From the IMG/VR virus record IMGVR_UViG_3300023181_000025, positions 1-64,000 of that record: a DNA stretch of 64,000 bases. One strand, 5' to 3'. The notes beneath the pieces were generated by a model. It made no database searches, was not told the DNA's origin, and saw only the letters and a program-made list of their open reading frames with translations. The position numbers and the translations under genes were made by a program. Every line of letters starts with the position of its first letter. The stretch's first letter is position 1. Below are positions 3,517 through 64,000 of the stretch, one piece after another.

Positions 3517-4890
3517 TTACTTTTTAAGCGGTTCTTCTTGTAAGGTTACACCTAAATCTTTTAACCAAGTGTCATACATTGATTCATTTTTATGGTATGC
3601 GCATTTTATTAAAGTGATTTTTCGGCCATATATTAAGCCTGCAATTGCAAAGTGCAACCTATCTGTTTCTATCTCTGTATGTTGGCTAGCCAACTTAAGA
3701 TAATCATTTGGAGTGGGACATATAAACACAGGATCCCCCAAATCATTTTCTATATCTACAAAATAGGATTCTATATCTTTTCTAATATATTTCCCCGCCC
3801 CCTTCGTCGGTTCAGGCGAAGTTAATTTAGGAATAGCTAAAGCTAAGTCCGGCATAAGTAATAGATTTGGATGGTTTCCTTTTGCTATTTCAAAAGATTT
3901 TTTTTCACGAACGATTAAAAGACTGGCTAAATTTAAATGATCTCCATACTCCTCAATGGATTGTGGCATTACAATAAAAGGCTTGTTTGCTGCTTTGAGG
4001 AACTTTCCTATTTTTGAGAACAATTCATTATGCTTCCACCTCCCAGAGACGCCGCCGCCGCCCGCCCAACAATAAATATCACAATCTTCTGAGGGGATCA
4101 TCGTTTCTATTGGGTAGAACTCGTGCTCTATTCCATGTCTGTTCAACAACATTCGGGTTCCTTGATAAATAAGGCCATCCCCCACATTACATTTTGGAAC
4201 CAAAATGGCCACTTTTTTATTTCTAAGTATTTTTAATAAGTCCTCCCATTTGCTGTCAGAAATCAGACCTTCTTTTCCGGATTGTAGCCGAGGCATCATC
4301 TCCTTGCCGGTTCTATCTGATATTCCTCCAATCGTTCCAAACAACATCTTATCCAAACACAAAAGTTTTAGCTCCGACTTTTCCAACGCCAAATGTAACA
4401 GGGATTCATAGCAAAACCCTTGGTCAGAAAGGTCAACAAGTGCCGCAAGTCTATAAGCTATTTCTAAAAAACCCTTTTCTTTCAAAAGTTTTGTGTTGTA
4501 TAGCACTGCGTGAGAACCATAATAAGGTAAGAGAACTTCTTTTGTCTCTCCGTCTCCTGTAGGGATTATTTTTGTTATCTCTGCTCCCAACAATATCGCT
4601 CCGCAATCTTCTGGAAATTCAGGTAAATCTATATTAATATCCACCCCTTCAAAAACTGTTACGTCATCTTCAAGAACCAATACTGGACCTTTGGATTTTT
4701 TTATAATCTCCAAATGACTTAAAGAACAACCTCTGATAGCCCTAGAGTCTCTTTTAGTCTCCCAGATAGGGCAAATAGCTCTAAATATTTTGGTCTTCCT
4801 TAAAGATTTACGGATATTTCCAATACAGTCTTCTCTATCTATACGTTTGTCGTCGTGGATTATTTGGCATTCGAAATCTTTTAAAAACAT
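3517..4890 (-). CDS. Fusion of a GT25-like glycosyltransferase (N-term) and a polysaccharide pyruvyltransferase (C-term)
   Basis: GCSLSH...VLVLEDD...GSHAVLY (GT25-type); NVGDGLI...GGGG...PQSI...VREKKS...PDLA...TDRLHFAI (PS_pyruv_trans-type). Confidence 0.8.
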   Translation of the reverse strand: MFLKDFECQIIHDDKRIDREDCIGNIRKSLRKTKIFRAICPIWETKRDSRAIRGCSLSHLEIIKKSKGPVLVLEDDVTVFEGVDINIDLPEFPEDCGAILLGAEITKIIPTGDGETKEVLLPYYGSHAVLYNTKLLKEKGFLEIAYRLAALVDLSDQGFCYESLLHLALEKSELKLLCLDKMLFGTIGGISDRTGKEMMPRLQSGKEGLISDSKWEDLLKILRNKKVAILVPKCNVGDGLIYQGTRMLLNRHGIEHEFYPIETMIPSEDCDIYCWAGGGGVSGRWKHNELFSKIGKFLKAANKPFIVMPQSIEEYGDHLNLASLLIVREKKSFEIAKGNHPNLLLMPDLALAIPKLTSPEPTKGAGKYIRKDIESYFVDIENDLGDPVFICPTPNDYLKLASQHTEIETDRLHFAIAGLIYGRKITLIKCAYHKNESMYDTWLKDLGVTLQEEPLKK

Positions 4891-4899
4891 AATTCACAA

Positions 4900-4928
4900 T
4901 TAATAATACATTTTCCCGGTTTTGTCAA
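4900..4928 (-). promoter_or_regulatory. sigma70-type promoter of the GT25-pyruvyltransferase gene
   Basis: TTGACA-N17-TATTAA, ATG 9 nt downstream. Confidence 0.55.
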
Positions 4929-10855: not shown

Positions 10856-10856
10856 T

Positions 10857-39966: not shown

Positions 39967-40586
39967 TGAAAACGTATTTAAGAAATTTTTACCCACAAGA
40001 TTCTTCTCTTATCGCGGAAATGAATTATATTGACTTGGGATCAAAGTTTTCGAATTTTGGGCTAATTGGAGAAGAGTATAGCATTATATTTAATTTAGTA
40101 AATAGGAATCTTTTTTTTGAAAATAGTTTTATAGGGTCTTTGGGAAATAGTAATTCAGTGCATTTAAAGGTATTATGTGAAAATTCTGTTATATACATAC
40201 TATTGAATGAAATTCCAGTTAAAAATATTAATAAGAAATTTAAATTTTACAAAGTTTTTTGTGAATCGGAAGATAATTTTAATTTCATAGAAAATATTAA
40301 AGGTATTATACCTAAAATTGAATTAAATTTTTCGGAATGGAAAAAAGATGGCAGTGGAGAGATAAGTATAAATATAGATTTGGAGCATGATCTTGAAATA
40401 TATAATCTTGGTTCGGATTCACTCTATGCAAATATATTAAACTATCCTAGAACAGTATCAAAAAAAAATCCAGGAAAAATAATAATAAATTACGAAGGTA
40501 AAAGAAAATTTTGCTCTGAAGAAACTATAGTTTTCTATACTTCTGCTGGAATCTATAAAACAAACTTAAAGATAGACTATAAATAA
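39966..40586 (+). CDS. Hypothetical AT-rich protein
   Basis: ORF abutting both neighbours. Confidence 0.55.
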   Translation: MKTYLRNFYPQDSSLIAEMNYIDLGSKFSNFGLIGEEYSIIFNLVNRNLFFENSFIGSLGNSNSVHLKVLCENSVIYILLNEIPVKNINKKFKFYKVFCESEDNFNFIENIKGIIPKIELNFSEWKKDGSGEISINIDLEHDLEIYNLGSDSLYANILNYPRTVSKKNPGKIIINYEGKRKFCSEETIVFYTSAGIYKTNLKIDYK

Positions 40587-42176
40587 ATGAGTTTAAAGAA
40601 TAGTGCATCCTTTTCTTCTAATAGGCAGTCTCTTCAGTCCGATTCTTCTTTCGGCCCTTTTGAAGTAATCGACATGGGTGGGGGAAAAGTTGGAGTTAAT
40701 CAAGGCGTTATAATAAATAAAAGTGGGACTTTTTATATTGACTCTGATGACTTTTTAAGTCCAGCGAAACCGCAAAATTTATTGAGCGGTCCTGTTGTAG
40801 GGGCACAATTGCTAACCGTTCAAAATAACGGATTTGTTTGCATATTAATTTCGCCTAAAGCAACAGAAGACCCGGCCAAGCATGAGTATGAGGCCAGACT
40901 TGTTTATAGGTCTCCTGCCGATTTGCAAGGGGAATCCGGGCAAGTAATAAAATTGGCTAAAATCAGATCAATAGATTCTAGTTCTCCTGGGCAGGCTATA
41001 GATGTTGAAAATCTTTATGTTGGAAATATAATTATAAACGAGGGATCTTATCATGCATATCAAGTCATAGTTGATTCTGGAGTTCAGAAAGTTTATGTTG
41101 CAAATGGAAGCGTGGCAGCAACGATGCTTTGTGGTGATGAGGTGGTTACCGAGCCAATGATACCATACATTGGGGATGGCGGAGAAACAGAAAGTGGCGG
41201 ATTTATGGGATCTTGGGGTTTTGGAGGTTTCGATACCTCTTCTTCTTATGGAGTTTATGTTAAATTCGACTTTAGGGGTGCGGTGGTAGAAATTGTAGAA
41301 AACGACGAGGAATTAGAGCTTAAAGACTGTGAACGGGCATTTCAAGTTGCTAGGTTTAAATTGAAGAACGCAAGCTCTGGAGGAGGTTTGGTTGCGGATT
41401 ACATCACACAATATTGGCATAGTGATGTTTACTCTATGTTTGAAAAGTTTAATGAAAGTGAGGGCGGATGTTGTAATTCGAATGATGACTCTGGGGGTTC
41501 AGACGACGGCTCAGATGATTCAAGTGGTGGTGGCGATGGAAGCTCTGGCGATTCAGATGGCGATTCGGGTGATTCAGAAGGTTCTGAGGGTTCAGAAGGT
41601 GATAGTTCAGATGACGATTCGGATGATGATTCTTCGAGAGAATGTGATGATTTACTTGTGATGTCAAATTTAAGAGTTGTTGATGAAAATTATTATGGAT
41701 TTGGATGGAGTGGAAAATGTTTTGATGATCCTAGTGCCTCAAGTGCTCAGGGATCTATTGAAGTTGTTGTTGATTATGCTCCACTATGCACAAATTGTGC
41801 CAAGCATACTTATGTAGAAATTACGTGTAGTGGATTAGGAACTAAAAGACAAGTTGTCCCAATTGGTTCTTTTGGCGGAGTTCCGGGAGGAATGACTCCG
41901 GGAGGGTTTATAAAAGTAAAATTTGATTTCAGCTTAATTTTTCCTTGCACTGATTATGTTATAAGAGCTGTATTTTACCTCGTAAATGGGCCAAACTTAG
42001 ATACTCAGTTCCCATGCGAGGCAGAAAGCCCTGATCCCGATGATTTTGTTTATGAGAGTCTTATGAAAACAATATCTTGGAAATCAAGGGGTTATTGTGG
42101 AGATGGGATTGATTGCGAGAGTGGAGTTGATTCTTTAGTTTCCGATGAAGACGAAGAAGATCTTCCGTGGGCTTAA
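40587..42176 (+). CDS. Tail-associated protein with Ser/Asp/Gly low-complexity linker and Cys-rich C-terminal domain
   Basis: Last gene of the tail block; 53-aa S/D/G/E tract. Confidence 0.55.
   Translation: MSLKNSASFSSNRQSLQSDSSFGPFEVIDMGGGKVGVNQGVIINKSGTFYIDSDDFLSPAKPQNLLSGPVVGAQLLTVQNNGFVCILISPKATEDPAKHEYEARLVYRSPADLQGESGQVIKLAKIRSIDSSSPGQAIDVENLYVGNIIINEGSYHAYQVIVDSGVQKVYVANGSVAATMLCGDEVVTEPMIPYIGDGGETESGGFMGSWGFGGFDTSSSYGVYVKFDFRGAVVEIVENDEELELKDCERAFQVARFKLKNASSGGGLVADYITQYWHSDVYSMFEKFNESEGGCCNSNDDSGGSDDGSDDSSGGGDGSSGDSDGDSGDSEGSEGSEGDSSDDDSDDDSSRECDDLLVMSNLRVVDENYYGFGWSGKCFDDPSASSAQGSIEVVVDYAPLCTNCAKHTYVEITCSGLGTKRQVVPIGSFGGVPGGMTPGGFIKVKFDFSLIFPCTDYVIRAVFYLVNGPNLDTQFPCEAESPDPDDFVYESLMKTISWKSRGYCGDGIDCESGVDSLVSDEDEEDLPWA
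41478..41636 (+). repeat. Low-complexity Ser/Asp/Gly coding tract
   Basis: SNDDSGGSDDGSDDSSGGGDGSSGDSDGDSGDSEGSEGSEGDSSDDDSDDDSS (18 Ser in 53 aa). Confidence 0.9.
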
Positions 42177-42184
42177 TAATTAAA

Positions 42185-42214
42185 CTTGACAAATTGTCAA
42201 GAATAATATAATAT
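42185..42214 (+). promoter_or_regulatory. sigma70-type near-leaderless promoter whose -35 lies in a perfect palindrome
   Basis: CTTGACAA-A-TTGTCAAG; TTGACA-N17-TAATAT; ATG 7 nt downstream. Confidence 0.7.
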
Positions 42215-42221
42215 ATTTATT

Positions 42222-43985
42222 ATGATATTTGATGAGTATTTTGATAGAGTCGTTATATTAAGTCTTAATAACGAAGAAGGAAAGAAACGTTCCGAAAGAG
42301 CTATTAGAGAGTTAAAAGATAAAAATTTAAGCCAGAATGCTATAGTTTACCGTGCGGTAGACGGTAGAATATGCCGCCCACCTGATTGGTGGCCTGCCGG
42401 TCAAGGAGCTTGGGGGTGTCTCCAAAGCCATAACAGAATGGTTCAGGATGCTCTTCAAGATCAATGTAAATCTATTCTTATAATTGAGGATGACGCTATA
42501 TGGCAATCGAATGCTTATGATTTAGCAAAACAAGTTCTAGAAGAATTGCCAGATGATTGGGGTCAACTTTATTTAGGTGGGCAGCATCGGGGAGCTTTTG
42601 GTCCAACTAAAATACCCGGAAAAGATTCTATTGTAGTCGCAAATAGTATTCATAGAACTCATTGCTATGCACTAAACGCAAAAATTATGAGAAAATTCCT
42701 TAAACATATAATGGATTTCCCTGAGTATTCGAGAGCATTTAAGGAAAGCGACCAAAGAAGACATATCGACCATCAATTAGAGGAGGCGCACAGAAATAAA
42801 CTATGGAAAACTTATGCCTCTTCATGGTGGCTTGCAGGTCAAGGAGAAAATAAGAGTCATATAAATCTTAAAGAAAATACTGATAAATGGTGGCATTTTG
42901 TATGGGAGGATAACCACAGGGGAATTCCAATAATTATTATGGATCGCACCCCGACTAACCATGAGTTAAAATATTTACATTTTGGATATAATTTAACAGA
43001 AGAAGATCAAACTATAGATATCGGTGTAAGCGGCGCGAAGGACGCCAAGGCTTTAAACAGAGCTATTGAGTTTATTGCTATAGAGGGGTATAAGTTACAA
43101 AGGTTTCCTTGTGTTAATGTAAATGATAATAAGGACAAAATTGGTTGGATAAATGGTTTTTGGAAAGCCGGGGTTATAAATCTATCTTCCGGTCCAGACT
43201 TGGAAAAAATGTCAGATTTTGTAAATTCGAAAATAATTAACCATTACTGGATTAACCCACCTAAGGTTTTATCTGATGTTTTCTACTTGGATGAAAGTGA
43301 GTTTGAAATAATACCCAACAAAACGATCCACCAAATTTCATTAGATAGCAATCATTATAGAGACGATCTTAAATTTTGTTCTGAATCCGTAAAAACATGT
43401 TTTTTTCAGAATCCTTATAAACTATGGCAAGAGCGCGATATTCTTCATGGACTTGTGGGGAAATCTATTGCTCCAGAAGTAATTATAAATAAAGACAATT
43501 ATTATAGTCCCGAAGTTAGATCGGCTTTTATAAAATTAGAAATACTAAGACAGTTTGGGGGGTTGGTGTTAGATTTGGATATAGCCATATATAAGCCTGA
43601 GATTTCTCAGATTTTTAATGGGGATAAATTTATCTATTCTGATAGCGATATAGGAAAATGCTCTAATTCAATTATGTATGCTAGAAAAAATAATTTATTA
43701 GTGGAACTGTATTTAAGGAGAATGAGTGTTCAATTGCTGGATAACGGGGATGTTGATCCTATTAAATCTATGAGAGAATCTTTAGACTTTTATGTAAATA
43801 AGTGGAATGTTGAATCCACTTTAGAAATTTCTGGACAGTTGGTTGGCAATATATACAAAAACGGAAATGTTGTATTTTTACCTCATCAATCCTTTTTTCC
43901 TTATCAAAGAAAAACAGATTCAATGGAGACGTTTAAATTAGAAAATTACACTAAGGCATTTGCTGCCAAACATTGGAGAATATAA
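42222..43985 (+). CDS. Two-domain glycosyltransferase (GT25-like plus GT32/DXD-like)
   Basis: FDRVVILSL...RAVDG...GAWGCLQSH...ILIIEDDA...LYLGG...THCYA; C-terminal IPNKTIHQI...EILRQFGGLVLDLD. Confidence 0.8.
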   Translation: MIFDEYFDRVVILSLNNEEGKKRSERAIRELKDKNLSQNAIVYRAVDGRICRPPDWWPAGQGAWGCLQSHNRMVQDALQDQCKSILIIEDDAIWQSNAYDLAKQVLEELPDDWGQLYLGGQHRGAFGPTKIPGKDSIVVANSIHRTHCYALNAKIMRKFLKHIMDFPEYSRAFKESDQRRHIDHQLEEAHRNKLWKTYASSWWLAGQGENKSHINLKENTDKWWHFVWEDNHRGIPIIIMDRTPTNHELKYLHFGYNLTEEDQTIDIGVSGAKDAKALNRAIEFIAIEGYKLQRFPCVNVNDNKDKIGWINGFWKAGVINLSSGPDLEKMSDFVNSKIINHYWINPPKVLSDVFYLDESEFEIIPNKTIHQISLDSNHYRDDLKFCSESVKTCFFQNPYKLWQERDILHGLVGKSIAPEVIINKDNYYSPEVRSAFIKLEILRQFGGLVLDLDIAIYKPEISQIFNGDKFIYSDSDIGKCSNSIMYARKNNLLVELYLRRMSVQLLDNGDVDPIKSMRESLDFYVNKWNVESTLEISGQLVGNIYKNGNVVFLPHQSFFPYQRKTDSMETFKLENYTKAFAAKHWRI

Positions 43986-43986
43986 T

Positions 43987-44622
43987 ATGATACCAATAGA
44001 CTCCATACAAGTTATTAGTTTGCCAGAAAGGCATGATAGAAGAGAGATTCTTATTCCACTAATTAAACGAGCCATTAAATTAGGAATTTTTCCTGATATT
44101 GAGATAGAAATTATTAATAGGTTCCCTGTTGATGTTACAATGGTTCCTTCTTGGTGGAAGGATACTGAGGGGTATTATAGGTCTACACGAGAGCATATAG
44201 AAATATTACAAAATCTTTATCAACGAAAATCGAGTTTGGCTATGATTTTTGAAGATGACGCTTTGATACATGAAAATTTCTATTCCGGTGTAGAAGAATT
44301 TTATCAAGATATAAATAATTTGCGTCCCGATTGGGCTGCTTTATTTTTAGGGGGAAGAGACGAGAAAATGAAAGGAAGATTTCCAATTAATGCAATATCG
44401 TCCTTAAATAGAGGTTGTCTTGGAAGTCATGCTTATATTGTAAATCCTTACGGAATAAGAACTCTCCATGACAAGGCTTCAAAATGCGAAGAAATTATTG
44501 ATTGGTCTTATATGCGTTTAATGGGATCTATGTCCTGTTTTTATTCTCCGAGAAATTACATGGTAGGAACCCAAGCAGGGTGGTCAGATAATATGAAAAA
44601 ATACGTTCAAGAAGAAAATTAA
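43987..44622 (+). CDS. GT25-like glycosyltransferase
   Basis: VISLPERHDRR, MIFEDDA, LFLGG, GSHAYIV; probable start ATG 43987. Confidence 0.8.
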   Translation: MIPIDSIQVISLPERHDRREILIPLIKRAIKLGIFPDIEIEIINRFPVDVTMVPSWWKDTEGYYRSTREHIEILQNLYQRKSSLAMIFEDDALIHENFYSGVEEFYQDINNLRPDWAALFLGGRDEKMKGRFPINAISSLNRGCLGSHAYIVNPYGIRTLHDKASKCEEIIDWSYMRLMGSMSCFYSPRNYMVGTQAGWSDNMKKYVQEEN

Positions 44623-44624
44623 AA

Positions 44625-45830
44625 ATGAGTGAAATCAATAGATTTTATGAAATTTATAAAAATAAAATTAACCAAAACGAGTCTTCAACTGCTCTAATAA
44701 ACTTTCTTGATGAAAATTTATCATATAAATGTAAAACCGTATTAGATTTAGGTTGTGGGAATTTAGAATGGATTTCCAAGTGTGAGAGCATTAAAAACGC
44801 AAATTTATATTACTTGGGTGTAGATATAATTCCCGAACTAATAAAATATAACGAAGCTTTATATCCTTGGTTTAATGGTGTATGTGAAGATTTAGAGAGT
44901 TTTATTAAATGGCCAAAAGCGGATATAGTTATATTAAGAGATGTTTTAAAATATCATTGTAATAATACCGCTCGCGATATTATAATGTATTCCCTTTATA
45001 ATAAATGGGAATATTTAATTATATCAACCACTAAAAATGATATATCTAATTTTAAAAGAAAAAAAATAAGGGGCGGGAACTCTGAAGAATTTAATATTTT
45101 AGAGAGTTTTAAGTTTTTTGAATTTCCTATAATGAGAATAGAAAGAAAAAATTGTATGGATCTGGTTATAGCAAGGGGTGAAGGGCATTTTGATTATATT
45201 GAAATTGGGATATCTCACTTTGATACCATTCTACATAAGTCAATAAGGAATCATAAATCCCATAACCCTCCTTGGAAAGGAATTAGTATGGATGGTGTTT
45301 CATTCTTTTTGGATAAACTTCCCACTCAACAGGAAAACATTAAAGTTTTAGGTTGTATGGGATTACAAGAAGGATGTGGGGAGATATATTATATAGACCC
45401 TGACCAATATAAGCCGAAAAGAATTCCGGTTTATTTAAGTGGTTACTCTAAACTTAATTCTCTACATGAAGTTTGTGTTGATAATTTAAATTCCCTATCA
45501 ATCTCCCCTGAAGAAGTTGTCTTAAAACAGGAGACCCCTATAATTTCTGCGGAATATTTAATAAAAAAATATAGCATCAAAACAATTGGTTATTTGAAGC
45601 TACAAACCAATGATAATGATTTAGAAATTTTATCTTATTTTATTGAGTGCTTCAAAGATAATTATGATTTACTTCCGGGAAAAATATCTCTCAGAATGCC
45701 AAGAAAAGACAGGTATAAACAAAGCTTATTTATACAAGTCATGAATTTTTTTAAGCTGAAGGGGTATATAATAGACGAGGCAAATAATTTAGATATTATA
45801 TTCACAAGGTATATTTCATATATACCCTGA
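44625..45830 (+). CDS. Class I SAM-dependent methyltransferase fused to an FkbM-like domain
   Basis: VLDLGCG, YLGVDI, RDVLKYH; second half DYIEIG...GISMD...IGYLKLQT (degenerate FkbM-like). Confidence 0.65.
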   Translation: MSEINRFYEIYKNKINQNESSTALINFLDENLSYKCKTVLDLGCGNLEWISKCESIKNANLYYLGVDIIPELIKYNEALYPWFNGVCEDLESFIKWPKADIVILRDVLKYHCNNTARDIIMYSLYNKWEYLIISTTKNDISNFKRKKIRGGNSEEFNILESFKFFEFPIMRIERKNCMDLVIARGEGHFDYIEIGISHFDTILHKSIRNHKSHNPPWKGISMDGVSFFLDKLPTQQENIKVLGCMGLQEGCGEIYYIDPDQYKPKRIPVYLSGYSKLNSLHEVCVDNLNSLSISPEEVVLKQETPIISAEYLIKKYSIKTIGYLKLQTNDNDLEILSYFIECFKDNYDLLPGKISLRMPRKDRYKQSLFIQVMNFFKLKGYIIDEANNLDIIFTRYISYIP

Positions 45831-46562
45831 GAACCTGTCTTTTTCAGATACATAGTCTGAAAGAATTAAATTGACTGGAGTTCCTAGTGCTATGCTTGGA
45901 AGATATACATGGAGTCTCGAAGTGTTTACTTGTGAAGCCTGAGATATAAAATTTACTCTTTTTAAAGCTAAATCTATTCTTTCTTGGAAACCTTTTCCTT
46001 TTAGGTTATTATCAATTTGCTGAATTGAACTTGAATATGTTTTATAATTTAAAAGATTATCTATATCGTAAGAGCCTTCTCTTTGTCCTGTATATTTTGG
46101 GAATGTCAAAGATATGCAGCCTCCGAATTCCGCATCGACTCCGCATTTCCTTAAAAAATCTCTGGTAGCTATATCCCGGCACATCGCGGGAAAACCTTGT
46201 TGCTTTACCATAGATTTGAACCACTCTCTTTTAGCATAGGCATTTTTTTGCCTAATGTCTCGGCAGTGATAACTTGCTATAATAACGTCTGTTTTACATG
46301 GCAGAACGTCTCTTCCTATCCATCCACACAAGAGAACAAGAGAATCTTTCGGCCAAGTAGAAAATTCGTCCCTTGAGACAAAATTATTGACGCCAAAAAA
46401 ACTTGAAGCAGCTAGTGATTGAATATCATCCCCTAAATTATTAGAACCTAATGCAATTGGAATATGGGTGACTTGATTTAAAAAAGATTCCCGCAACCAA
46501 GATAAATTCATTGGTTGCGGGAAAGTATTTTCGTTTATATCGTTTTGAAGGATCTTAATCAT
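45816..46562 (-). CDS. Polysaccharide pyruvyltransferase-family protein
   Basis: NLGDDIQS, CRD..T, TSRLHVYLP...LGTPV. Confidence 0.8.
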   Translation of the reverse strand: MIKILQNDINENTFPQPMNLSWLRESFLNQVTHIPIALGSNNLGDDIQSLAASSFFGVNNFVSRDEFSTWPKDSLVLLCGWIGRDVLPCKTDVIIASYHCRDIRQKNAYAKREWFKSMVKQQGFPAMCRDIATRDFLRKCGVDAEFGGCISLTFPKYTGQREGSYDIDNLLNYKTYSSSIQQIDNNLKGKGFQERIDLALKRVNFISQASQVNTSRLHVYLPSIALGTPVNLILSDYVSEKDRFSGYI

Positions 46563-47269
46563 TCAAATTCTTCTTTATCCGCCGCTTCGATGATGGAAAT
46601 TCTGTCTTCCTGATATTGGAAACTATGGCGGGGACCATCATAGTAAGCAAGGGGGCTTTTTAGAGAGAACTTCTGGTTCTCTATATCGAACTCTAACTCT
46701 ATAATTTCACAGTTTTTAGGGTTTCTTATAAGCTCAAACTCTTCAACAGATAAGTTCAAAAGGCTCATTAAGTGAACCCTTATGAACATACCATGACTTA
46801 CAATCCCTATATTTGGAGGGCAATCCTTTTCGTTAAGTCGATTTATTAATTCTGTTAAATTAAATAACTCCGCTCTTTCATAAACATCTGCGCAACTTTC
46901 GCCTCCCGGAAACCTATAATGGAAAACTCCCCATTTAAGCCGTTCCCTTTCGAGATCCATATTGGAGTGTGTCCCTACACTGTTAGTCCACTCTTGTTCC
47001 CTAATTAAAGGGGTTTCTTTTTTTCGTATTACTTTATTTTTTAAAGTTTTCGAAATATTGAAAAAGGTCTGTCTTGTCCTGTGGTGCGTAGAAACGAAAA
47101 AATCAAATTCGCCATCAATTTTAGATAAGATTTTTCCCGCTTTTTGAGCTTGTTCTGTTCCCCTTTTGGTAAGTTTTATGGCATAGTCAGGTGTATCGCT
47201 ATAAATATTATGATTAATATTTCCTTCGCTTTCTGCATGTCTCACCAAAAGTATTCTTTTATTCTTCAT
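46559..47269 (-). CDS. Histidine phosphatase (phosphoglycerate mutase superfamily)
   Basis: LLVRHAESEGN, IREQEW, FPGGES, IVSHG; probable start ATG 47269. Confidence 0.9.
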   Translation of the reverse strand: MKNKRILLVRHAESEGNINHNIYSDTPDYAIKLTKRGTEQAQKAGKILSKIDGEFDFFVSTHHRTRQTFFNISKTLKNKVIRKKETPLIREQEWTNSVGTHSNMDLERERLKWGVFHYRFPGGESCADVYERAELFNLTELINRLNEKDCPPNIGIVSHGMFIRVHLMSLLNLSVEEFELIRNPKNCEIIELEFDIENQKFSLKSPLAYYDGPRHSFQYQEDRISIIEAADKEEFE

Positions 47270-47270
47270 A

Positions 47271-47933
47271 TTAATGGTGGTCATAGATTTTAACTGGCTT
47301 GCTTTTCATAATTTTGTCAATTTCATCAAGCCAGAAAAAACTTCTACTCGTATGCTTAATTGCGTTTTCAACCCCACAATCCAACATTTTCCCAAAGTCC
47401 TTTTCTTCTGGGTTTAGTTGAGGGCAATTTGAGTGGCTATGCCCAAAGAGGGCCGGTAACTCGTATTTCATTTTATCCCAAATAAGTGGCGCAAAATGCG
47501 AGCAAAAATATGTCCTTTTATTGGCGACCATGAAAAACTGATCCCCTAAAATATATTTACCCTCTTCAATTTCAATTGGGAAAATGTCTTGTCTGACTCC
47601 CAGAACGTTTTGCGGGTTTTGAAACTTGACTGCTTCATCATACATTTGTTTAATACCTGATGGATGATTTCCAAAAAGAAACAATGTTCTACATGGTATT
47701 TCTCGAACTAGATTCGCTACATCTGTATTGTCGGCATTGAGAGCAAAATCCCCTAAAGAAATTAAAATGTCATCTGGCTTTAGTAGCTTCCAGTCTTCGC
47801 GAATCTTAGATAGATTTTCTTCTCTATTTTTAAAACCTCTTGGGCAATAAAGAAATTCTTTGTTGTGGTAAGCATGTTGATCCGATTGGACCGCTATACG
47901 GCCAAATTTTAAATTGTCTAGATTGATCTTCAT
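47271..47933 (-). CDS. Calcineurin-like metallophosphoesterase
   Basis: SDQH, LGD, GNH, SH, GHSH. Confidence 0.85.
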   Translation of the reverse strand: MKINLDNLKFGRIAVQSDQHAYHNKEFLYCPRGFKNREENLSKIREDWKLLKPDDILISLGDFALNADNTDVANLVREIPCRTLFLFGNHPSGIKQMYDEAVKFQNPQNVLGVRQDIFPIEIEEGKYILGDQFFMVANKRTYFCSHFAPLIWDKMKYELPALFGHSHSNCPQLNPEEKDFGKMLDCGVENAIKHTSRSFFWLDEIDKIMKSKPVKIYDHH

Positions 47934-47939
47934 GCCACG

Positions 47940-47968
47940 ATTATCGTTCGAAGATCGGCAATAGTCAA
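47940..47968 (-). promoter_or_regulatory. sigma70-type leaderless promoter
   Basis: TTGACT-N17-GATAAT, ATG 6 nt downstream. Confidence 0.7.
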
Positions 47969-48141
47969 GGATTTTTTTCTCCAGTATTGCCTGATTTCAG
48001 GCTTTCTGAATTTTGTTTAATTTCGTAAAGAAATCTGTCCGGTATGGAACCGACTTCAAAAATACTTATTGGGTATCCAAACCAATAGTAATAAGAGTTG
48101 TCCCCTTTAGGGAAGAGTGTCTTCGATGCTAGAAGTTTCAT
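47965..48141 (-). CDS. Hypothetical 58-aa protein (not in ORF track)
   Basis: Hand translation MKLLASKTLFPKGDNSYYYWFGYP...GEKNP*; fills the gap in a tightly packed operon. Confidence 0.45.
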   Translation of the reverse strand: MKLLASKTLFPKGDNSYYYWFGYPISIFEVGSIPDRFLYEIKQNSESLKSGNTGEKNP

Positions 48142-48436
48142 TATTTTTTAATTTAATGGTCATAAAATTTTTAGGTATCTCAAAAACAAGCTGTTTGTTT
48201 GTGTAAAAATCTATATGCTCCCCTATATCTGAGGAAATATCTATTTCCGAAAATTTTTCTAAAAATAAAGCAGTCTCATTAAAATAAATGGATTCTTGAT
48301 GAAAAGTTTCTTTCAAGCCTTCTAGTTTACGAGAAGCTTCGTCAATCGCACTCAAAATCCTCTTTAATCTTTTTCCTCTTTCATAAAAGTTTACAAGAGA
48401 AGATTGTAATATAAAATCAGGGATTTGCAGTGCCAT
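48107..48436 (-). CDS. Hypothetical protein
   Basis: 109-aa ORF overlapping neighbours. Confidence 0.55.
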   Translation of the reverse strand: MALQIPDFILQSSLVNFYERGKRLKRILSAIDEASRKLEGLKETFHQESIYFNETALFLEKFSEIDISSDIGEHIDFYTNKQLVFEIPKNFMTIKLKNNETSSIEDTLP

Positions 48437-49232
48437 CGGTTTTTTCTTTCTTTTTTGTTGATTTGGTTACGATTGTCTCATGAATAAGAAGACAGTCATT
48501 CGTTGGAATATCTTTAAAATCATTCCAAGCTTCGTGTCCATCCCACTCTTTTTTAAGAAGTGCGTCTTTTAGGTCGGCAAAGGTCTTCCCTTTTGCTGCA
48601 AGAACATTTTTTAAACTGTCTTGTGGGCTTTTTGGCGCTTCATCTAATAATGAGCTAGTTATTTCCTTTGGTGAACTATTAATTTCTTCCGCACCTAAGA
48701 TATTAATATTTAGACCAGACTTAACCGCCCGAATAAATGCTCTGTTTTCGGCCATACTCTCAAGGAATAACTTGAAAGGGTAAACCGTATTCTCGTCTGT
48801 AGCATTCGCTAGGCCAGAAAATGATTGTGGCCGAAAATTAACCCCATCAATTTCTACTTCATCAAAATCAATATTGCATTTTACTGCTACATAGCCCTCT
48901 TCCGTATTAAAACGATGATGTTCCACCTTTGATAACCCCCTTAGGTGGGCAATATGTTTGAATCCAGCCAATCTAATAAGAAGATTCTCGTCTCCTGCCA
49001 AACTTTTAAGAGAGTTCTTTTCTTCTTGCGGAAGATCATCATAATTAGAAATTTCGTTTTTTGCCAGCCACGATGAATTTATTTCAATATACTTATCTGG
49101 GACTTTACTTTTCCAATCGAATAAGGCTGCATTGGAATATACTTTCTTTTCAGGGACGGATTCTTGTTCAACGATTTTTTTTGTCCTTGTCTTCTTTGCG
49201 GCAATTTCTTTTGTGTTTTCTTGGTCTGACAT
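48417..49232 (-). CDS. Putative single-strand annealing protein (Rad52/Redbeta-like)
   Basis: G..A.A...N....MAENRAFIRAV...NI..LGAEEI resembles the SSAP core. Confidence 0.45.
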   Translation of the reverse strand: MSDQENTKEIAAKKTRTKKIVEQESVPEKKVYSNAALFDWKSKVPDKYIEINSSWLAKNEISNYDDLPQEEKNSLKSLAGDENLLIRLAGFKHIAHLRGLSKVEHHRFNTEEGYVAVKCNIDFDEVEIDGVNFRPQSFSGLANATDENTVYPFKLFLESMAENRAFIRAVKSGLNINILGAEEINSSPKEITSSLLDEAPKSPQDSLKNVLAAKGKTFADLKDALLKKEWDGHEAWNDFKDIPTNDCLLIHETIVTKSTKKKEKTDGTANP

Positions 49233-49235
49233 AAT

Positions 49236-50282
49236 TTATTTTTTAATGTAATATAGAAAAACTTCAGCCTCTTCCAGAAAATCTTTATCTTCCGCTCCGG
49301 CTAAAATGTTGTTTCCTCGTGGGTCGCTAGATTTTATGTTATTCTTTAAGTGGAATAAACTATTAAACGTTCCATTTTTAGAAACTATTTTTCTTTTTGA
49401 TTCTATGTAAGTATCATGCCTTAAACCAAGTAATTTGTCAACATTATTTTTCCCCCAATTTTCGCTTACTTGAATTGGTTTAAAATCAAAGAATTGGAAT
49501 TTTAGCTCTTCTACATTTTGGTCATCGTAACATACCAATATATAAGGGATTCCTAATTTTTCTATCTCTCTCACTGACTCAGGCTCTATTCCCTTACCTA
49601 GAAATATGTCTATCCTTTCGCAGCCTTTTAGAAATGGCAAAATGGACGTAGGGATTTTACTTGATATACTTATAATGGGTTTGGTCCCTGCACTTACCGC
49701 ATCCATAGCAAATTTCCAATTTTTAAATAAGTCACATCTAATCCCAATTGGGGATTTAGGCAACCGGCTAATTGTATGGAAATTAAAATCTGGAATTATT
49801 TCTATAACCTCTACCCCAAAATCTGGCCCGACTAAAACAGTTTCGATATTAACATTTATATCAATTTTACATTTATCAAAAATGTATTGGGCTACGACTT
49901 CAGGGTTTTCATCATTTATCTTTAAATGGTTTAGGTTTTTTGACAATTCTAGTATCCACTCATTATCAGAAATTAAACATATCGCATTTTTCGCAAGATA
50001 TGCGTAGTGTCTTATATTTTTTGTATTAACTGGAAATGAACCATTCAAAGGGTTTCCACCATTAAGGTTAATATTGCATATGTAAATATCTTTTTGGGCA
50101 AGAATTGGTGCCGTTATGTCAATAACTTGTTTCCAATATGGAAACCCTCCGTCATTTGAGACTATTATGTATTTTTCAAACGGGAGAGGAAAATAATTAT
50201 AATTTATTTTTTCTACCTCTTCTTGTGGGTTTCCATACAAAGAAAATTTAATATTTTCTATTTCAGTTATTGATCTCATCAA
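49236..50282 (-). CDS. Hypothetical protein with degenerate GT9-like (GT-B) N-terminal half
   Basis: PYWKQVI...NIRHYAYLAKNAICLISDN resembles the GT9 C-terminal Rossmann domain. Confidence 0.4.
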   Translation of the reverse strand: MMRSITEIENIKFSLYGNPQEEVEKINYNYFPLPFEKYIIVSNDGGFPYWKQVIDITAPILAQKDIYICNINLNGGNPLNGSFPVNTKNIRHYAYLAKNAICLISDNEWILELSKNLNHLKINDENPEVVAQYIFDKCKIDINVNIETVLVGPDFGVEVIEIIPDFNFHTISRLPKSPIGIRCDLFKNWKFAMDAVSAGTKPIISISSKIPTSILPFLKGCERIDIFLGKGIEPESVREIEKLGIPYILVCYDDQNVEELKFQFFDFKPIQVSENWGKNNVDKLLGLRHDTYIESKRKIVSKNGTFNSLFHLKNNIKSSDPRGNNILAGAEDKDFLEEAEVFLYYIKK

Positions 50283-52131
50283 ATATTTTGTTGTTTTTAA
50301 AGATTACCTTTTTAAACCTAAATTCCTCATTTTTATTTTTTACTTCAGAAAGCCAAATGGGGTCTATTGATTTACTTGATTTCGGAATAATTTTATAACT
50401 ACCGCACTCTAAATAAATTTGTTCATCTACTTCATCCGCTACAATATAAACTTTTTCATTTTCGCAAAGGTCTTTTACAAATTTAAGACAGGCTAGTCGT
50501 TGCTCAATTTTTGGAGGGGATATAAAAGCTACAAATCCTTTATCCGTATCGTTTTCGAAATAGGTGGTGATTTCTGTTTTTTTTCTATTCGTGTTATTTT
50601 TTCGGGCGAATTCAGTAGTTGTTTTATAAACATTCTCTTTTGTATCACCGAATTCTATTTTTTTAAGAAGTTTTTTAATAACTTGACTATCTTTTGTCTC
50701 GTCTTGATTCAGAACACCTTTTATTAGGTCTATACACCAGTCCGTAGTATCTTCTATATCTTGGAATGGGTAGCTTGGATTAAATTCAAATCTATTAATT
50801 GAATAATTATTATCCGGTTCTGGACAACTATCTATCCAATCTTCAATTAATCCGCAAATGCGCTTTACATTAAATCGTTCACTTGCCCAAGATGAACCAT
50901 CCTTTGATCTAGAGTCTATATTATTTGATTCACAGAAGTTTTTAATTAGCTCGGCAATATGATTTGGTGAGGGTTGGGCTTTTTTGAATTGACTTTGGCA
51001 CTCCCTGTATTCTGTATGGGTTATTGTATCAACAAATGGTTGTTCGCAGAACTCTTCTCCACAGGAATAATTAACGGTGGCTACTGGCGTTCCTGCCATT
51101 AGGCTTTCTACGATTGGCATTTCTAGGCCGCCTGATGTTACCGGATGAACATAGTAATCAATAACATTGTAGATTTCGTTCATTTGGGGGTCCGAAACGC
51201 CCTTGTAGCTCTTTACAGTATATTGGGATTTTTCGCTGCCGCAATGTTGACAGTTTTCTTTATCTGTAATAAACGGTTTTAATGAATAGCCTCCACAATT
51301 ATTACATACATAAGTGGCTAGAACATCTTCGTTGTTTATATTATATTCTTCCAGAAATGAGGGGATATCCCACTTGCCTTCTTCGACCCAATTAGTGTGA
51401 AGCAAGAGTTTTGCTTTAATATTTGGATTTGAGTTTTTAAAAATTGAAAAGGCCTCAATTAGTGTTCCTACTAATTTACGAAGCTGATTTCTAAAAACAA
51501 AACCTACAATAACAGTGTTTGAGTCAAGATTATTTTTTTTCTTAATTGCTAATTTATCCAGCGGTTTAAAATTTTCTGTATCAATTGCTCCCGGAATTGT
51601 TTTGACATGAGTGTGACCGAGTCTCTTAAATTCATTTTCCGCGAATTTACTCCAAACCCATAAATTTTTAATTTTGTGGGCGTTTTCTCTGGCCTCTTTA
51701 TATAAAGGTAAAGAGTCTGCGGTAGCCCATATAGCACAATTGACTTTGTTCCACCAAGGCTTGTCGGTATATCCATCAAATGCCCAGAAATCATTGACAC
51801 CGATATAAATATCTGGCCGTTCTTTTTCTATTATATCGTCTATATAAAGTCCACCGTATTTACTTATACTATTTAAATACTCAGATTCTTCAAGGGCATT
51901 TTTTGCCCCTCGTTCTTCCGGCATGGCCCCATAGGCCCGCCACGGAACCGCTGAAAGCCTTTTATCTTTATAGGTGAATGGGGCGCAAGCAAATTCAATT
52001 ATCTCATATTTCCCCGTAGCATATAAATACGACAAAACAGCTTTGGCGTTTTTACCAAAGCCGGATGGAGTTTTACAAAAATCACTAGCCCAAAGAATTT
52101 TTTTCTTTTTGCTGTTACTTGTTTCCATCAT
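50263..52131 (-). CDS. GT4-family (GT-B) glycosyltransferase with Zn-ribbon insert
   Basis: SGFG, RPDI, RNQLRK, MNEIYN..D, GGLEMPIVESLMAGTPV; CNNC...CQHC insert. Confidence 0.85.
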   Translation of the reverse strand: MMETSNSKKKKILWASDFCKTPSGFGKNAKAVLSYLYATGKYEIIEFACAPFTYKDKRLSAVPWRAYGAMPEERGAKNALEESEYLNSISKYGGLYIDDIIEKERPDIYIGVNDFWAFDGYTDKPWWNKVNCAIWATADSLPLYKEARENAHKIKNLWVWSKFAENEFKRLGHTHVKTIPGAIDTENFKPLDKLAIKKKNNLDSNTVIVGFVFRNQLRKLVGTLIEAFSIFKNSNPNIKAKLLLHTNWVEEGKWDIPSFLEEYNINNEDVLATYVCNNCGGYSLKPFITDKENCQHCGSEKSQYTVKSYKGVSDPQMNEIYNVIDYYVHPVTSGGLEMPIVESLMAGTPVATVNYSCGEEFCEQPFVDTITHTEYRECQSQFKKAQPSPNHIAELIKNFCESNNIDSRSKDGSSWASERFNVKRICGLIEDWIDSCPEPDNNYSINRFEFNPSYPFQDIEDTTDWCIDLIKGVLNQDETKDSQVIKKLLKKIEFGDTKENVYKTTTEFARKNNTNRKKTEITTYFENDTDKGFVAFISPPKIEQRLACLKFVKDLCENEKVYIVADEVDEQIYLECGSYKIIPKSSKSIDPIWLSEVKNKNEEFRFKKVIFKNNKIFDEINN

Positions 52132-63632: not shown

Positions 63633-63836
63633 TTATAAATTTTCTTTTCTTATTTTGTAAAACGGGCATTCCTCACAATGCTCTTCATTCAAATCCTCTA
63701 TATTCCTATAGAAGCACAAGTATGCCATATGGAGGGTATCTTTGCAACAAGAAAATTCTCCAACCTCAACTTCTTCAAAGCTCCTATATTTACAGGAATG
63801 AAACTTTTCTTTTCCAGATAATTCTTCATTAGCCAT
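63633..63836 (-). CDS. Small Cys-rich protein
   Basis: Probable start ATG 63836 (MANEEL); CKY...CC...C...CEECPFY. Confidence 0.6.
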   Translation of the reverse strand: MANEELSGKEKFHSCKYRSFEEVEVGEFSCCKDTLHMAYLCFYRNIEDLNEEHCEECPFYKIRKENL

Positions 63837-64000
63837 TTTGGGATAATGCACTTTCTACCATTTCTTTTACAAGTTTATCAAAATCATATTCGGGCTTCCA
63901 TCCCATATCTTTTCGAATAAGGTCGCTACTCCCTACGTTCTTAATCGTAGACTCGGAGGGTCGAAAAAACTTAGGATTTATTTTTACAAATATTATTTCT
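63829..64000 (-). CDS. gmd: GDP-mannose 4,6-dehydratase, 3' end only (truncated by window; not in ORF track)
   Basis: Hand translation ...VKINPKFFRPSE....VGSS..IRKDMGWKPEYDFDKLVKEMV...* matches the Gmd C-terminal FFRP.E...G......LGW.P...F..LV.EMV signature. Confidence 0.75.
   Translation of the reverse strand, partial: EIIFVKINPKFFRPSESTIKNVGSSDLIRKDMGWKPEYDFDKLVKEMVESALSQNG

What the first reader, a model, noticed from the sequence alone, without database searches (positions are those of the whole stretch)
40587..52131. Candidate phage-encoded glycan pathway with pyruvylation and methylation, probably decorating the virion
Seen: the window holds about six glycosyltransferase domains (GT25-like at 3517-4890, 42222 and 43987; GT32/DXD-like in 42222; GT4 at 50263; weak GT9-like at 49236). 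It also has two polysaccharide pyruvyltransferase domains (3517-4890, 45816), a SAM/FkbM-like methyltransferase (44625) and GDP-mannose 4,6-dehydratase (63829-64000). Both GT25 blocks sit directly downstream of a large tail fibre/tip gene, and each has its own sigma70-type promoter. Known: mycobacteriophages glycosylate capsid and tail proteins with adjacent GTs, and Mimivirus fibrils carry pyruvylated glycans. Inference: this tailed phage makes its own sugar donor and builds a pyruvylated/methylated oligosaccharide on virion proteins. Host-surface remodelling is the alternative. No flippase, Wzy or membrane-anchored GT is visible, which favours a cytoplasmic substrate.
Basis: partly seen in the sequence, partly recalled or inferred. 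Interest (0 to 1): 0.82.

Follow-up and report, generated by a model that had tools for sequence, protein, structure and literature searches.

The report
Phage tail-protein glycosylation and methylation cassette
A 211-kb phage from leaf litter carries a gene cassette that recurs in many unrelated phages: a tail protein with a serine/aspartate-rich loop, then sugar-adding enzymes and methyltransferases, which probably coat that loop with a methylated sugar chain; no experiment has yet shown this.

Summary
Most enzyme assignments hold: GT25+GT32 (42222), GT25 (43987), a dual methyltransferase (44625), pyruvyltransferases (45816, 3517), GT4-like (50263) and the Gmd end. The "GT9-like" 49236 and the "own promoters" do not hold.

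The 11.5 kb is not one pathway. It is two convergent units: the end of the tail operon (40587-45830, +) and the end of the replication-side operon (52619-45816, -).

The real finding is a mobile cassette. It consists of a tail protein with a ~55-aa Ser/Asp/Gly acidic linker (40587), then GT25(+GT32), then a SAM methyltransferase.
- In 11 of 11 instances of the 40587 family, a GT25 gene lies immediately downstream.
- 7 of 7 two-domain GT loci also carry the methyltransferase.
- No other window tail gene has a homologue in the GT25 loci first fetched.
- The GT25 family occurs in 235 viral contigs. Among cellular genomes it is almost confined to Verrucomicrobiota and Planctomycetota.

The most likely function is cytoplasmic O-glycosylation of the linker, with methyl capping, before tail assembly. 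This is inferred from gene linkage only. Comparative data do not tie pyruvylation, GT4 or Gmd to the cassette. I rate it a new variant of phage virion glycosylation.

The parts
40587..42176 (+). Tail-module protein of 529 aa and candidate glycan acceptor. It has an N-extension, a conserved beta-sandwich N-domain (aa ~91-285), an acidic Ser/Asp/Gly linker and a Cys-rich beta-sandwich domain (aa ~355-510).
   Evidence: It is translationally packed with the upstream tail genes. The AF2 model shows two beta-rich domains separated by a disordered stretch at 290-350. A profile of the N-domain finds 79 representative proteins, and 58 of them have a Ser/Asp/Gly linker right after the domain. Homologues sit directly after the tape-measure protein, with or without a ~250-aa gene between, in L002, L004, L005, L134 and L135.
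41448..41642 (+). Coding region of the Ser/Asp/Gly/Glu low-complexity linker (aa 288-352; 19 S, 18 D, 15 G of 65), the proposed O-glycosylation site.
   Evidence: Sequence and composition. It is not a DNA tandem repeat. The family-wide linker composition is S 36%, D 18%, G 14%, E 8%, with a mean length of 55 aa.
42222..43985 (+). Two-domain glycosyltransferase of 587 aa: a GT25-like GT-A domain (aa 1-230, E89-D90-D91), a conserved middle subdomain (231-350) and a GT32/Och1-like GT-A domain (aa ~360-587, D451-x-D453).
   Evidence: Pfam. 82 homologues, of which 11 are full-length with PF04488. Invariant residues. AF2 pLDDT is 91.9. Foldseek matches Mimivirus R655 at 1.6e-11, human COLGALT1 at 5e-11 and Och1 at 3.8e-7.
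43987..44622 (+). Second, single-domain GT25-like glycosyltransferase (211 aa, EDD motif).
   Evidence: Pfam PF01755, 27.9 bits. hhalign to the A1 profile gives probability 97.9% and E=3e-13. The ATG at 43987 follows the upstream stop codon directly.
44625..45830 (+). Fusion of two methyltransferase domains: class-I SAM MTase (aa ~19-158) and an FkbM/Methyltransf_21-like domain (aa ~187-387).
   Evidence: phrog_3382 at 3e-11 plus weak Methyltransf_31/25 matches. The two halves match separate genes of L004, one of which carries PF05050. N-half homologues follow the GT in L008, L088, L133, L134 and L135.
45816..46562 (-). Short polysaccharide-pyruvyltransferase-like protein (248 aa), the last gene of the minus-strand unit. 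It converges on and overlaps the end of the MTase gene. Its link to the cassette is not shown.
   Evidence: Pfam 26.7 bits against a 25.3 cut-off. Atlas feature score 0.96 and TM 0.78 to PS_pyruv_trans clusters. No homologue in the GT25 loci screened (L002-L085).
46559..47933 (-). Histidine phosphatase (46559-47284) and phosphoesterase (47271-47933). Their role in any glycan pathway is not shown.
   Evidence: His_Phos_1 at 1e-26 and phrog_547 at 3e-20. NCBIfam matches are all far below the family cut-offs.
48107..50282 (-). Three genes of unknown function (109, 271 and 348 aa). The 348-aa 'GT9-like' call is unsupported, and the 271-aa protein is phage-specific with weak recombination-protein leads.
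50263..52131 (-). GT-B, GT1/GT4-like glycosyltransferase (622 aa) with a C-terminal extension, two genes downstream of the DNA polymerase III alpha gene in the same minus-strand unit. Its substrate is unknown.
   Evidence: Glycos_transf_1 30.6 bits. phrog_2170 at 9e-28. Its only GenBank phage relatives are cyanophage 'glycosyl transferase group I' genes at 24-25% identity. No relative in IMG/VR apart from itself.
3517..4890 (-). GT25-like domain fused to a pyruvyltransferase (457 aa), directly downstream of the fibre-like gene 4925-7462.
   Evidence: Homologues sit late in the structural regions of other phages: in L090 after a 1084-aa Big-like protein, and in L091 a few genes before a holin. 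The L090 neighbours have no homologue in the window.
4925..7462 (-). Fibre-like protein of 845 aa with no Ser/Asp linker.
   Evidence: Weak Phage_fiber_rpt match (E=6e-4). Sequence.
63829..64000 (-). 3' end of a GDP-mannose 4,6-dehydratase gene (366 aa; contig 63829-64929).
   Evidence: Translation. JGI gene call with PF16363/PF01370, flanked by RNR and SSB genes.

Best explanation
Genes 40587-45830 form a self-contained cassette at the end of the tail operon. Soluble, Mn2+/DXD-type GT-A glycosyltransferases (GT25, GT32 and a second GT25) use host-made nucleotide sugars in the infected cytoplasm. They build a short O-linked glycan on the serines of the ~65-residue acidic Ser/Asp/Gly linker of tail protein 40587.

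The likely benefit is a protease-resistant, hydrophilic or shielding loop on an exposed tail part, by analogy with glycosylated Ser-Asp repeats of staphylococcal adhesins.

Shown: the domain identities, conserved catalytic motifs, soluble nature, and tight, repeated gene linkage across otherwise unrelated phages.

Inferred: the acceptor, the order of steps, the sugar identities and the benefit.

The minus-strand genes (pyruvyltransferase, phosphatases, GT4-like) and Gmd may contribute, but nothing ties them to this cassette.
For: 1. The enzymes are credible. The EDD motif and several His/Asp residues are invariant in 36-48 homologues. DxD is invariant in the GT32 half. The AF2 model has pLDDT 91.9, and its best structural matches are GT25 enzymes that act on, or are proposed to act on, proteins (human COLGALT1, Mimivirus R655), plus Och1 (PMC9546862).
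2. Linkage is strong. All 11 instances of the 40587 N-domain family have a GT25 gene immediately downstream (window, L002, L004, L005, L008, L086, L087, L088, L133, L134, L135). Three of these were sampled without reference to the GT.
3. Of the 24 window proteins tested, including all tail genes downstream of the tape measure, only three cassette genes (40587, 42222, 44625) have homologues in the GT25 loci first fetched (L002-L085); the second GT25 (43987) matches only the GT25 genes themselves, and the tape-measure protein matches two loci. So the cassette moves as a unit.
4. All 7 two-domain GT25/GT32 loci carry a homologue of the 44625 methyltransferase within two genes downstream. The GT25-only loci L002 and L005 have none.
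5. The Ser/Asp/Gly linker is a family trait: 58 of 79 representatives have it, at the same position, with composition conserved but not sequence. More widely, 54 of 70 GT25 loci have a linker protein among the three upstream genes. Linker ORFs are 70 of 209 near the GT vs 14 of 830 elsewhere.
6. No transmembrane segment, flippase or polymerase is present.
7. In Verrucomicrobiota genomes the same GT25 family lies next to giant RHS proteins with poly-Ser stretches. This is a second context that pairs it with Ser-rich extracellular proteins.
Against: - No biochemical or proteomic evidence exists: everything rests on gene neighbourhood.
- The loci are phylogenetically related, so the counts are not independent events.
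- GT25 enzymes characterised in bacteria act on LOS/LPS, and none is known to glycosylate serine.
- The linker could be only a flexible acidic spacer common in these tail proteins.
- 16 of 70 GT25 loci were not scored as having a linker protein nearby. One of them, L002, is a mis-score, because its linker ORF overlaps the extended GT ORF.
- The fibre next to the second GT25 block (4925-7462) has no such linker.
- The fold of 40587 gave only generic beta-sandwich matches, so its place in the virion is inferred from gene order alone.
Confidence: 0.5

Rival explanations
1. The cassette does glycosylate the virion, but on another acceptor, such as tail fibres, the major capsid protein or the tail tube as in mycobacteriophages. 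The Ser/Asp linker protein would then be only a co-inherited tail part, or an adaptor or scaffold for the enzymes.
For: Both GT25 blocks follow fibre- or tail-like genes. The 845-aa fibre next to the GT25-pyruvyltransferase fusion lacks a linker. GT25-pyruvyltransferase homologues also lie in the structural regions of other phages. Known phage virion glycosylation targets capsid and tail-tube C-termini (cited in PMC12619734).
Against: The only structural gene that travels with the GT25/GT32 and MTase genes is the linker protein. It is immediately adjacent in 11 of 11 cases.
Confidence: 0.17
2. The enzymes remodel a host envelope glycan (LOS/LPS core, capsule or S-layer glycan) late in infection. 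This could block superinfection or stop progeny from binding cell debris. GT25, GT4, the pyruvyltransferases and Gmd would then act as auxiliary metabolic genes.
For: Bacterial GT25 members are LOS/LPS galactosyltransferases (Pfam name). PS_pyruv_trans, GT4 and Gmd are typical polysaccharide genes. PHROGs files the GT families under moron / auxiliary metabolic gene.
Against: There is no membrane-anchored GT, flippase, polymerase or lipid-carrier enzyme. The cassette sits inside tail operons of small 50-60 kb phages and is locked to one tail protein. The polysaccharide-type genes on the minus strand are not conserved with it.
Confidence: 0.15
3. There is no joint pathway. The span is a chance juxtaposition of accessory genes at the junction of two convergent operons. 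Some of them, such as the GT4-like gene near the DNA polymerase gene, may act on DNA or nucleotides (base hypermodification).
For: The units are convergent. The minus-strand genes lie in one unit with polymerase, exonuclease, primase and helicase genes. Phage GTs that glycosylate DNA are known (reviewed in PMC12619734). The minus-strand genes have no homologues in the cassette loci screened (L002-L085).
Against: This cannot explain the conserved order of linker protein, GT25/GT32 and MTase on the + strand. No hydroxymethylase or DNA-GT family match was found in the window.
Confidence: 0.12

Closest known systems
Mycobacteriophage virion glycosylation (Che8, Corndog, Myrna type; Freeman et al. 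2023, as cited in PMC12619734 and PMC12801897; details from my own knowledge)
   Same: Phage-encoded soluble glycosyltransferases, with methyltransferases in some clusters, lie next to structural genes and O-glycosylate virion proteins in the cytoplasm.
   Different: There the acceptors are C-terminal extensions of capsid and tail-tube subunits. Here the candidate is an internal Ser/Asp/Gly linker of a tail-tip-region protein. The enzymes here are a GT25+GT32 fusion with no detectable sequence relatives among 50,697 GenBank phage records, apart from one uncultured phage. The likely hosts are Verrucomicrobiota and Planctomycetota, not Actinobacteria.
Staphylococcal SD-repeat glycosylation by SdgA/SdgB (PMC3794999, PMC8561734)
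   Same: A long Ser-Asp-rich low-complexity region of an exposed protein is O-glycosylated on serine by dedicated soluble GTs encoded next to the substrate genes. The glycan protects the region against proteolysis.
   Different: SdgA and SdgB are GT-B (GT4-type) GlcNAc transferases of a bacterium. Here the enzymes are GT-A (GT25/GT32), methylation is added, and the setting is a phage tail. This is a functional analogy only.
GT25 protein-directed enzymes: human COLGALT1 and Mimivirus R655 (PMC9546862; PDB 9evj, 9crz)
   Same: They are the best structural matches of the GT25 domain (E about 1e-11). COLGALT1 galactosylates a protein side chain (collagen hydroxylysine), and R655 is a putative homologue that has not been assayed. 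R655 is also virus-encoded.
   Different: Their acceptor is hydroxylysine in collagen repeats. No collagen repeats or lysyl hydroxylase occur here. Sequence identity is only 16-21%.
Bacterial LOS/LPS GT25 galactosyltransferases (Pfam PF01755 'LPS biosynthesis protein'; PDB 8xlz beta-1,4-galactosyltransferase)
   Same: Same Pfam family and fold, with a DXD motif.
   Different: Those enzymes sit in LOS/LPS loci and act on lipid-anchored oligosaccharide. This family sits in tail modules next to a Ser-rich protein.
Mimivirus fibril glycan cluster
   Same: A virus encodes GTs, pyruvyltransferase, methyltransferase and sugar-nucleotide enzymes to decorate virion surface proteins.
   Different: That is a giant eukaryotic virus making long polysaccharides. 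Here pyruvylation is not linked to the conserved cassette.

Membership tests
CAZy GT25 / Pfam PF01755 | Profile match above the curated cut-off | tested here: met
   42222: 34.3 bits. 43960/43987: 27.9 bits. The cut-off is 24. The N-domain of 3517 matches only by profile-profile comparison (86.9% probability, E=4e-6).
CAZy GT25 / Pfam PF01755 | GT-A fold with a conserved DXD metal/nucleotide-sugar motif | tested here: met
   E89-D90-D91 is invariant or nearly so in 36-48 homologues. The AF2 model has pLDDT 91.9 and matches COLGALT1, R655 and beta-1,4-GalT.
CAZy GT25 / Pfam PF01755 | Inverting transfer of a hexose from a UDP-sugar | not testable with these tools
   Needs an enzyme assay.
CAZy GT32 / Pfam PF04488 (Gly_transf_sug) | Profile match and DXD motif in a GT-A fold | tested here: met
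   The window protein itself gave no PF04488 hit at E<=0.01. Its full-length homologues carry PF04488. D451-x-D453 is invariant. Foldseek matches Och1 at 3.8e-7.
Polysaccharide pyruvyltransferase PF04230 | Profile match above the curated cut-off | tested here: met
   3517-4890: 75.1 bits. 45816-46562: 26.7 bits against a 25.3 cut-off, covering only the C-half of the profile, but the Atlas gives TM 0.78 and score 0.96.
Polysaccharide pyruvyltransferase PF04230 | Pyruvate-ketal transfer from PEP onto a defined sugar of the same glycan | not testable with these tools
   There is no comparative link to the cassette.
Mycobacteriophage-type virion glycosylation | GT genes embedded in or next to the structural gene module | tested here: met
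Mycobacteriophage-type virion glycosylation | Acceptor is a C-terminal extension of the capsid or tail-tube subunit | tested here: not met
   The co-inherited partner is an internal linker of a protein encoded after the tape-measure protein. Capsid and tail-tube genes could not be identified, so they were not examined.
Mycobacteriophage-type virion glycosylation | Glycans demonstrated on virions | not testable with these tools
   The phage is uncultured, from a leaf-litter metagenome.
SD-repeat glycosylation (SdgA/SdgB type) | Ser-Asp-rich low-complexity acceptor encoded next to the GT | tested here: met
   The linker is S 36%, D 18%, G 14% and is adjacent in 11 of 11 cases.
SD-repeat glycosylation (SdgA/SdgB type) | GT-B (GT4-type) enzymes | tested here: not met
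   The cassette enzymes have GT-A folds.
LPS/O-antigen modification loci | Membrane-associated steps (flippase, polymerase, lipid-carrier GT) or location in an LPS locus | tested here: not met
   No hydrophobic segment reaches a Kyte-Doolittle score of 1.6. The context is tail or replication genes.
GT9 heptosyltransferase (claimed for 49236) | Any significant sequence or structure match | tested here: not met
   No hit in Pfam, PHROGs, NCBIfam or PDB. The only lead is TM 0.33 on a model with pLDDT 0.47.

The most novel reading that the evidence does not exclude
A previously undescribed and widespread protein O-glycosylation system. A distinct GT25 clade, often fused to GT32 and followed by methyltransferases, is dedicated to Ser/Asp/Gly-rich linkers of extracellular proteins. 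It is shared between phage tail-tip proteins and giant RHS proteins of Verrucomicrobiota and Planctomycetota. It would be the first serine-directed GT25 and the first virion-glycosylation cassette outside actinobacteriophages, and it moves between unrelated phages as an acceptor-plus-enzymes unit.
Probability: 0.4. Interest if true: 0.78.

Novelty: new variant of a known kind. Interest (0 to 1): 0.64.

Why it matters
Experimental evidence for virion glycosylation in tailed phages comes, to my knowledge, essentially from mycobacteriophages, where it changes antibody recognition.

A portable cassette that carries both the acceptor loop and its enzymes would have four consequences:
- It would show that the trait is far more widespread: 235 viral contigs carry the GT family, and a different bacterial superphylum is involved.
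- It would give a defined and easily testable enzyme-substrate pair.
- It would extend GT25 chemistry to serine-rich linkers.
- It would offer a compact module for engineering glycan-shielded phage tails or glyco-tagged proteins.

It also gives a marker for predicting phages of Verrucomicrobiota and Planctomycetota, for which very few phages are known.

Tried and rejected
**Searches with no useful result**
- megablast of the region against GenBank phages found nothing. tblastn of the 20244-21368 protein, a guessed capsid candidate, also found nothing.
- tblastn of the GT25 domain found only one unannotated uncultured phage.
- phmmer against PDB for 40587 and 49236 gave nothing. For 42222 it gave only E~0.5 hits to COLGALT1, and for the GT4-like protein only chance hits.
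- The word-indexed homologue search with the 40587 N-domain found only itself. The exhaustive profile search was needed.
- IMG/VR has no relative of the GT4-like protein apart from itself.

**Ideas tested and dropped**
- Collagen-type acceptor for GT25: neither 40587 nor 4925-7462 has Gly-X-Y repeats.
- The high GC skew at 40-42 kb coincides with the Gly/Asp-rich linker codons rather than collagen repeats.
- The 212-kb contig carrying the closest GT25-pyruvyltransferase homologue (L090) is not a close relative. Only that one gene matches the window.
- An iterated N-domain HMM did not extend to the ~355-aa linker proteins of the marine siphophage loci. They share only a different C-terminal domain, which 40587 lacks.

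**Uninformative checks**
- Foldseek of the 40587 model gave only generic Ig/FN3/CBM matches, including the Wzt carbohydrate-binding domain at E=3e-3. This is too weak to use.
- The palindrome CTTGACAAATTGTCAAG in the 45-bp gap before 42222 does not recur as a motif in the window.
- The two pyruvyltransferase-like proteins show no detectable pairwise similarity.
- Per-gene GC content gave no clear signal of recent acquisition.

Full report
**Source and layout**

The window is the first 64 kb of a 211,168-bp viral contig, IMGVR_UViG_3300023181_000025 (JGI Ga0247815_10000014). Window coordinates equal contig coordinates. The source is a leaf-litter metagenome.

The contig is phage-like:
- large terminase at 13560-16298;
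- a 1950-aa tape-measure protein at 27347-33199 (PhageMin_Tail);
- a run of tightly packed + strand genes up to 45830;
- a minus-strand replication block with DNA polymerase III alpha, exonuclease, PHP, PD-(D/E)XK nuclease, primase and DnaB.

No GenBank phage is similar at the DNA level over the finding's region.

**Check of the observation**

Most domain calls are real. Scores and coordinates are given in the observation check and the parts list. In short:
- 42222-43985 is a GT25 N-domain plus a GT32/Och1-like C-half.
- 43987-44622 is a second GT25.
- 44625-45830 is a fusion of a class-I SAM methyltransferase and an FkbM-like domain. The two halves are separate genes in locus L004.
- 45816-46562(-) is a short pyruvyltransferase-like protein.
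- 3517-4890(-) is a GT25-like domain fused to a clear pyruvyltransferase.
- 50263-52131(-) is GT1/GT4-like.
- The last 172 bases of the window encode the C-terminus of a 366-aa GDP-mannose 4,6-dehydratase.
- None of these proteins has a transmembrane segment.

Two claims fail. The 'GT9-like' 49236 has no support in any library. Promoter-like sites are at chance level, 58 found against 52.7+-7.1 expected.

The 11.5 kb is also not one cluster. It is the end of the tail operon (40587-45830, +) meeting the end of the replication-side operon (52619-45816, -). The minus-strand operon also holds a histidine phosphatase, a phosphoesterase and phage-specific unknowns.

**What the comparative data show**

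The 587-aa GT has 82 homologues in the word-indexed database. Eleven are full-length GT25+GT32 proteins, and the rest are ~350-aa GT25 proteins. A profile of the family finds 235 IMG/VR contigs. Among 50,697 GenBank phage records it finds only one uncultured phage.

In relatives, the gene directly upstream of the GT is a homologue of window protein 40587. The match to L005 is E=4e-12, the match to L004 is E=2e-5, and L005 against L002 gives 1e-29.

All these proteins share one architecture:
- a beta-sandwich N-domain;
- an acidic Ser/Asp/Gly/Glu low-complexity linker of about 55 aa;
- a Cys-rich beta domain.

In the window the linker is aa 288-352. It is predicted to be disordered and lies between two well-modelled beta-rich domains.

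An exhaustive HMMER search with the N-domain profile over 1.84 billion proteins gave 79 representatives. In 58 of them the linker follows the domain at the same position. Its composition is conserved (S 36%, D 18%, G 14%, E 8%) but its sequence is not. In the window the linker is not a DNA tandem repeat.

The linkage is very tight:
- I picked three N-domain family members without reference to the GT (P0087, P0092, P0099). All three have the GT25 gene as the next gene, even where the contig breaks off after 53-65 codons.
- I picked three further two-domain GT loci via the GT (L133-L135). All have the N-domain/linker protein immediately upstream and a homologue of the 44625 methyltransferase downstream.
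- Overall, 11 of 11 N-domain instances have GT25 immediately downstream, and 7 of 7 GT25/GT32 loci carry the methyltransferase.
- The GT25-only loci L002 and L005 lack the methyltransferase.

Twenty-four window proteins were tested against the GT25 loci first fetched (L002-L085). Only three cassette genes (40587, 42222, 44625) found homologues there. The second GT25 (43987) matched only the GT25 genes themselves, and the tape-measure protein matched two loci. None of the other tail genes, minus-strand genes or pyruvyltransferases matched. So the cassette travels as a unit between otherwise unrelated phages.

In relatives the cassette sits after the tape-measure protein, usually after a conserved ~235-256-aa protein and sometimes before a tail fibre. 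In L133 and L086 the N-domain and linker form the C-terminal part of a 1179-1376-aa protein.

Among all GT25 loci with enough upstream sequence, 54 of 70 have a Ser-rich linker ORF among the three upstream genes. Linker ORFs are 70 of 209 near the GT against 14 of 830 elsewhere. These counts are not phylogenetically independent.

**Host clue and a second context**

Among one genome per species of 185,579 bacteria and archaea, the GT25 family hits 41 loci. Almost all are Verrucomicrobiota (Luteolibacter, Haloferula, Verrucomicrobium, Akkermansiaceae) or Planctomycetota.

Some of these loci look like prophage tail modules with linker proteins. In several Verrucomicrobiota loci, however, the GT25 gene lies next to a ~2000-aa RHS-repeat protein with long poly-Ser or Gly-Ser stretches. 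This is a second setting in which the family is paired with a Ser-rich extracellular protein.

**Mechanism**

The best-supported reading has four steps:
1. Soluble GT-A enzymes act in the infected cytoplasm and O-glycosylate the linker serines of 40587.
2. GT25 probably adds the first sugar.
3. GT32 and the second GT25 extend the chain.
4. The two methyltransferase domains cap it.

The pairing of GT32 with the methyltransferase (7 of 7, against 0 of 2 in GT25-only loci) suggests that the methyl group goes on the sugar added by GT32.

The closest structural relatives of the GT25 domain include a protein-directed enzyme (human COLGALT1) and a putative viral one (Mimivirus R655). So a protein acceptor is not foreign to the fold (PMC9546862).

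The nearest functional analogy is glycosylation of staphylococcal Ser-Asp repeats by SdgA and SdgB, which protects the repeats from proteolysis (PMC3794999). The nearest phage precedent is mycobacteriophage capsid and tail-tube glycosylation (cited in PMC12619734).

The acceptor, the sugars, the order of steps and the benefit are all inferences from gene linkage.

**What remains unlinked**

The comparative data do not connect the pyruvyltransferase 45816, the phosphatases, the GT4-like protein or Gmd to the cassette.

The second block, the GT25-pyruvyltransferase fusion after fibre gene 4925-7462, does recur late in the structural regions of other phages. That argues that pyruvylated glycans are also made near fibres. 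Its neighbours are not conserved, and the fibre has no Ser/Asp linker.

**Verdict**

- The virion-glycosylation reading is partly supported. It is sharpened to a specific and apparently undescribed cassette with a candidate acceptor.
- The single 'pyruvylation plus own sugar donor' pathway is not supported.
- I found no description of this cassette in the searchable literature.
- I rate it a new variant of a known kind, with moderate to high interest.

Noticed in passing
L096:9333-15587, L101:9057-15392, L114:566-6652, L124:462-6950 (Verrucomicrobiota genomes): Cellular homologues of the GT25 gene lie next to ~2000-aa RHS-repeat proteins (RHS_repeat, DUF6531; one with a Peptidase_M76 end). These proteins carry long poly-Ser or Gly-Ser stretches and may be another class of acceptors.
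   Followed up: partly
loci L092-L132: The GT25 clade is almost confined to Verrucomicrobiota and Planctomycetota among 185,579 species genomes. It could serve as a host marker for phages of the PVC superphylum. The window's 37% GC content does not obviously fit those hosts.
   Followed up: partly
window 41448-41660 and family members P0083-P0146: The acidic linker is often bracketed by cysteines (e.g. GGCC...SSREC in the window; ...CCP motifs in relatives). A Cys lies just downstream in 30 of 46 proteins (about 30% expected) and on both sides in 15 of 46. The segment may be a disulfide-stapled display loop rather than a free linker.
   Followed up: partly
L005:7615-8385, L002:7566-8333, L008:7924-8865, L087:113-829, L088:7231-7971, L134:4145-4843, L135:4081-4785: A conserved ~235-313-aa protein precedes the linker protein in most relatives. 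It has no PHROG match. No homologue was detected in the window, where a 206-aa gene of only 25% GC (39966-40586) occupies that place.
   Followed up: partly
L004 (JGI 3300062802, 66-kb contig): Here the cassette sits in a compact capsid, tape-measure and linker-protein module flanked by two integrase genes and a TrwC relaxase gene. This may be a satellite or an integrative element rather than a full phage.
   Followed up: no
window 13560-16298: The large terminase is unusually long (912 aa). Its terminase matches split into an N-terminal part (aa 30-150) and a distant C-terminal part (aa 451-783), which suggests an inserted domain or intein.
   Followed up: no
window 42185-42201: A perfect palindrome, CTTGACAAATTGTCAAG, lies in the only intergenic gap (45 bp) of the cassette. 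It does not recur in the window.
   Followed up: yes
window 48417-49232 (-): This 271-aa protein belongs to large phage-only clusters, with weak leads to single-strand annealing and recombination proteins (Sak, Rad52, ExoX_C). It is therefore probably replication-related rather than glycan-related.
   Followed up: partly
L003:564-1647 (contig ~71.9-73.1 kb, beyond the window): Just beyond the window lie a P-mevalo_kinase-like (dNMP-kinase-type) gene and a faint nucleoside deoxyribosyltransferase-like gene, next to RNR and SSB genes. These are worth checking for nucleotide or base modification.
   Followed up: no
window 9372-11543: A PhoH-like ATPase (9372-10142) and a protein with a sigma-70 region-2-like segment (10704-11543) lie upstream of the packaging genes.
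   Followed up: no
L133:10308-10994: One relative carries an extra stand-alone GT32 (PF04488) gene downstream of the cassette. In the window the extra enzyme is a GT25. The glycan therefore probably differs between phages.
   Followed up: no
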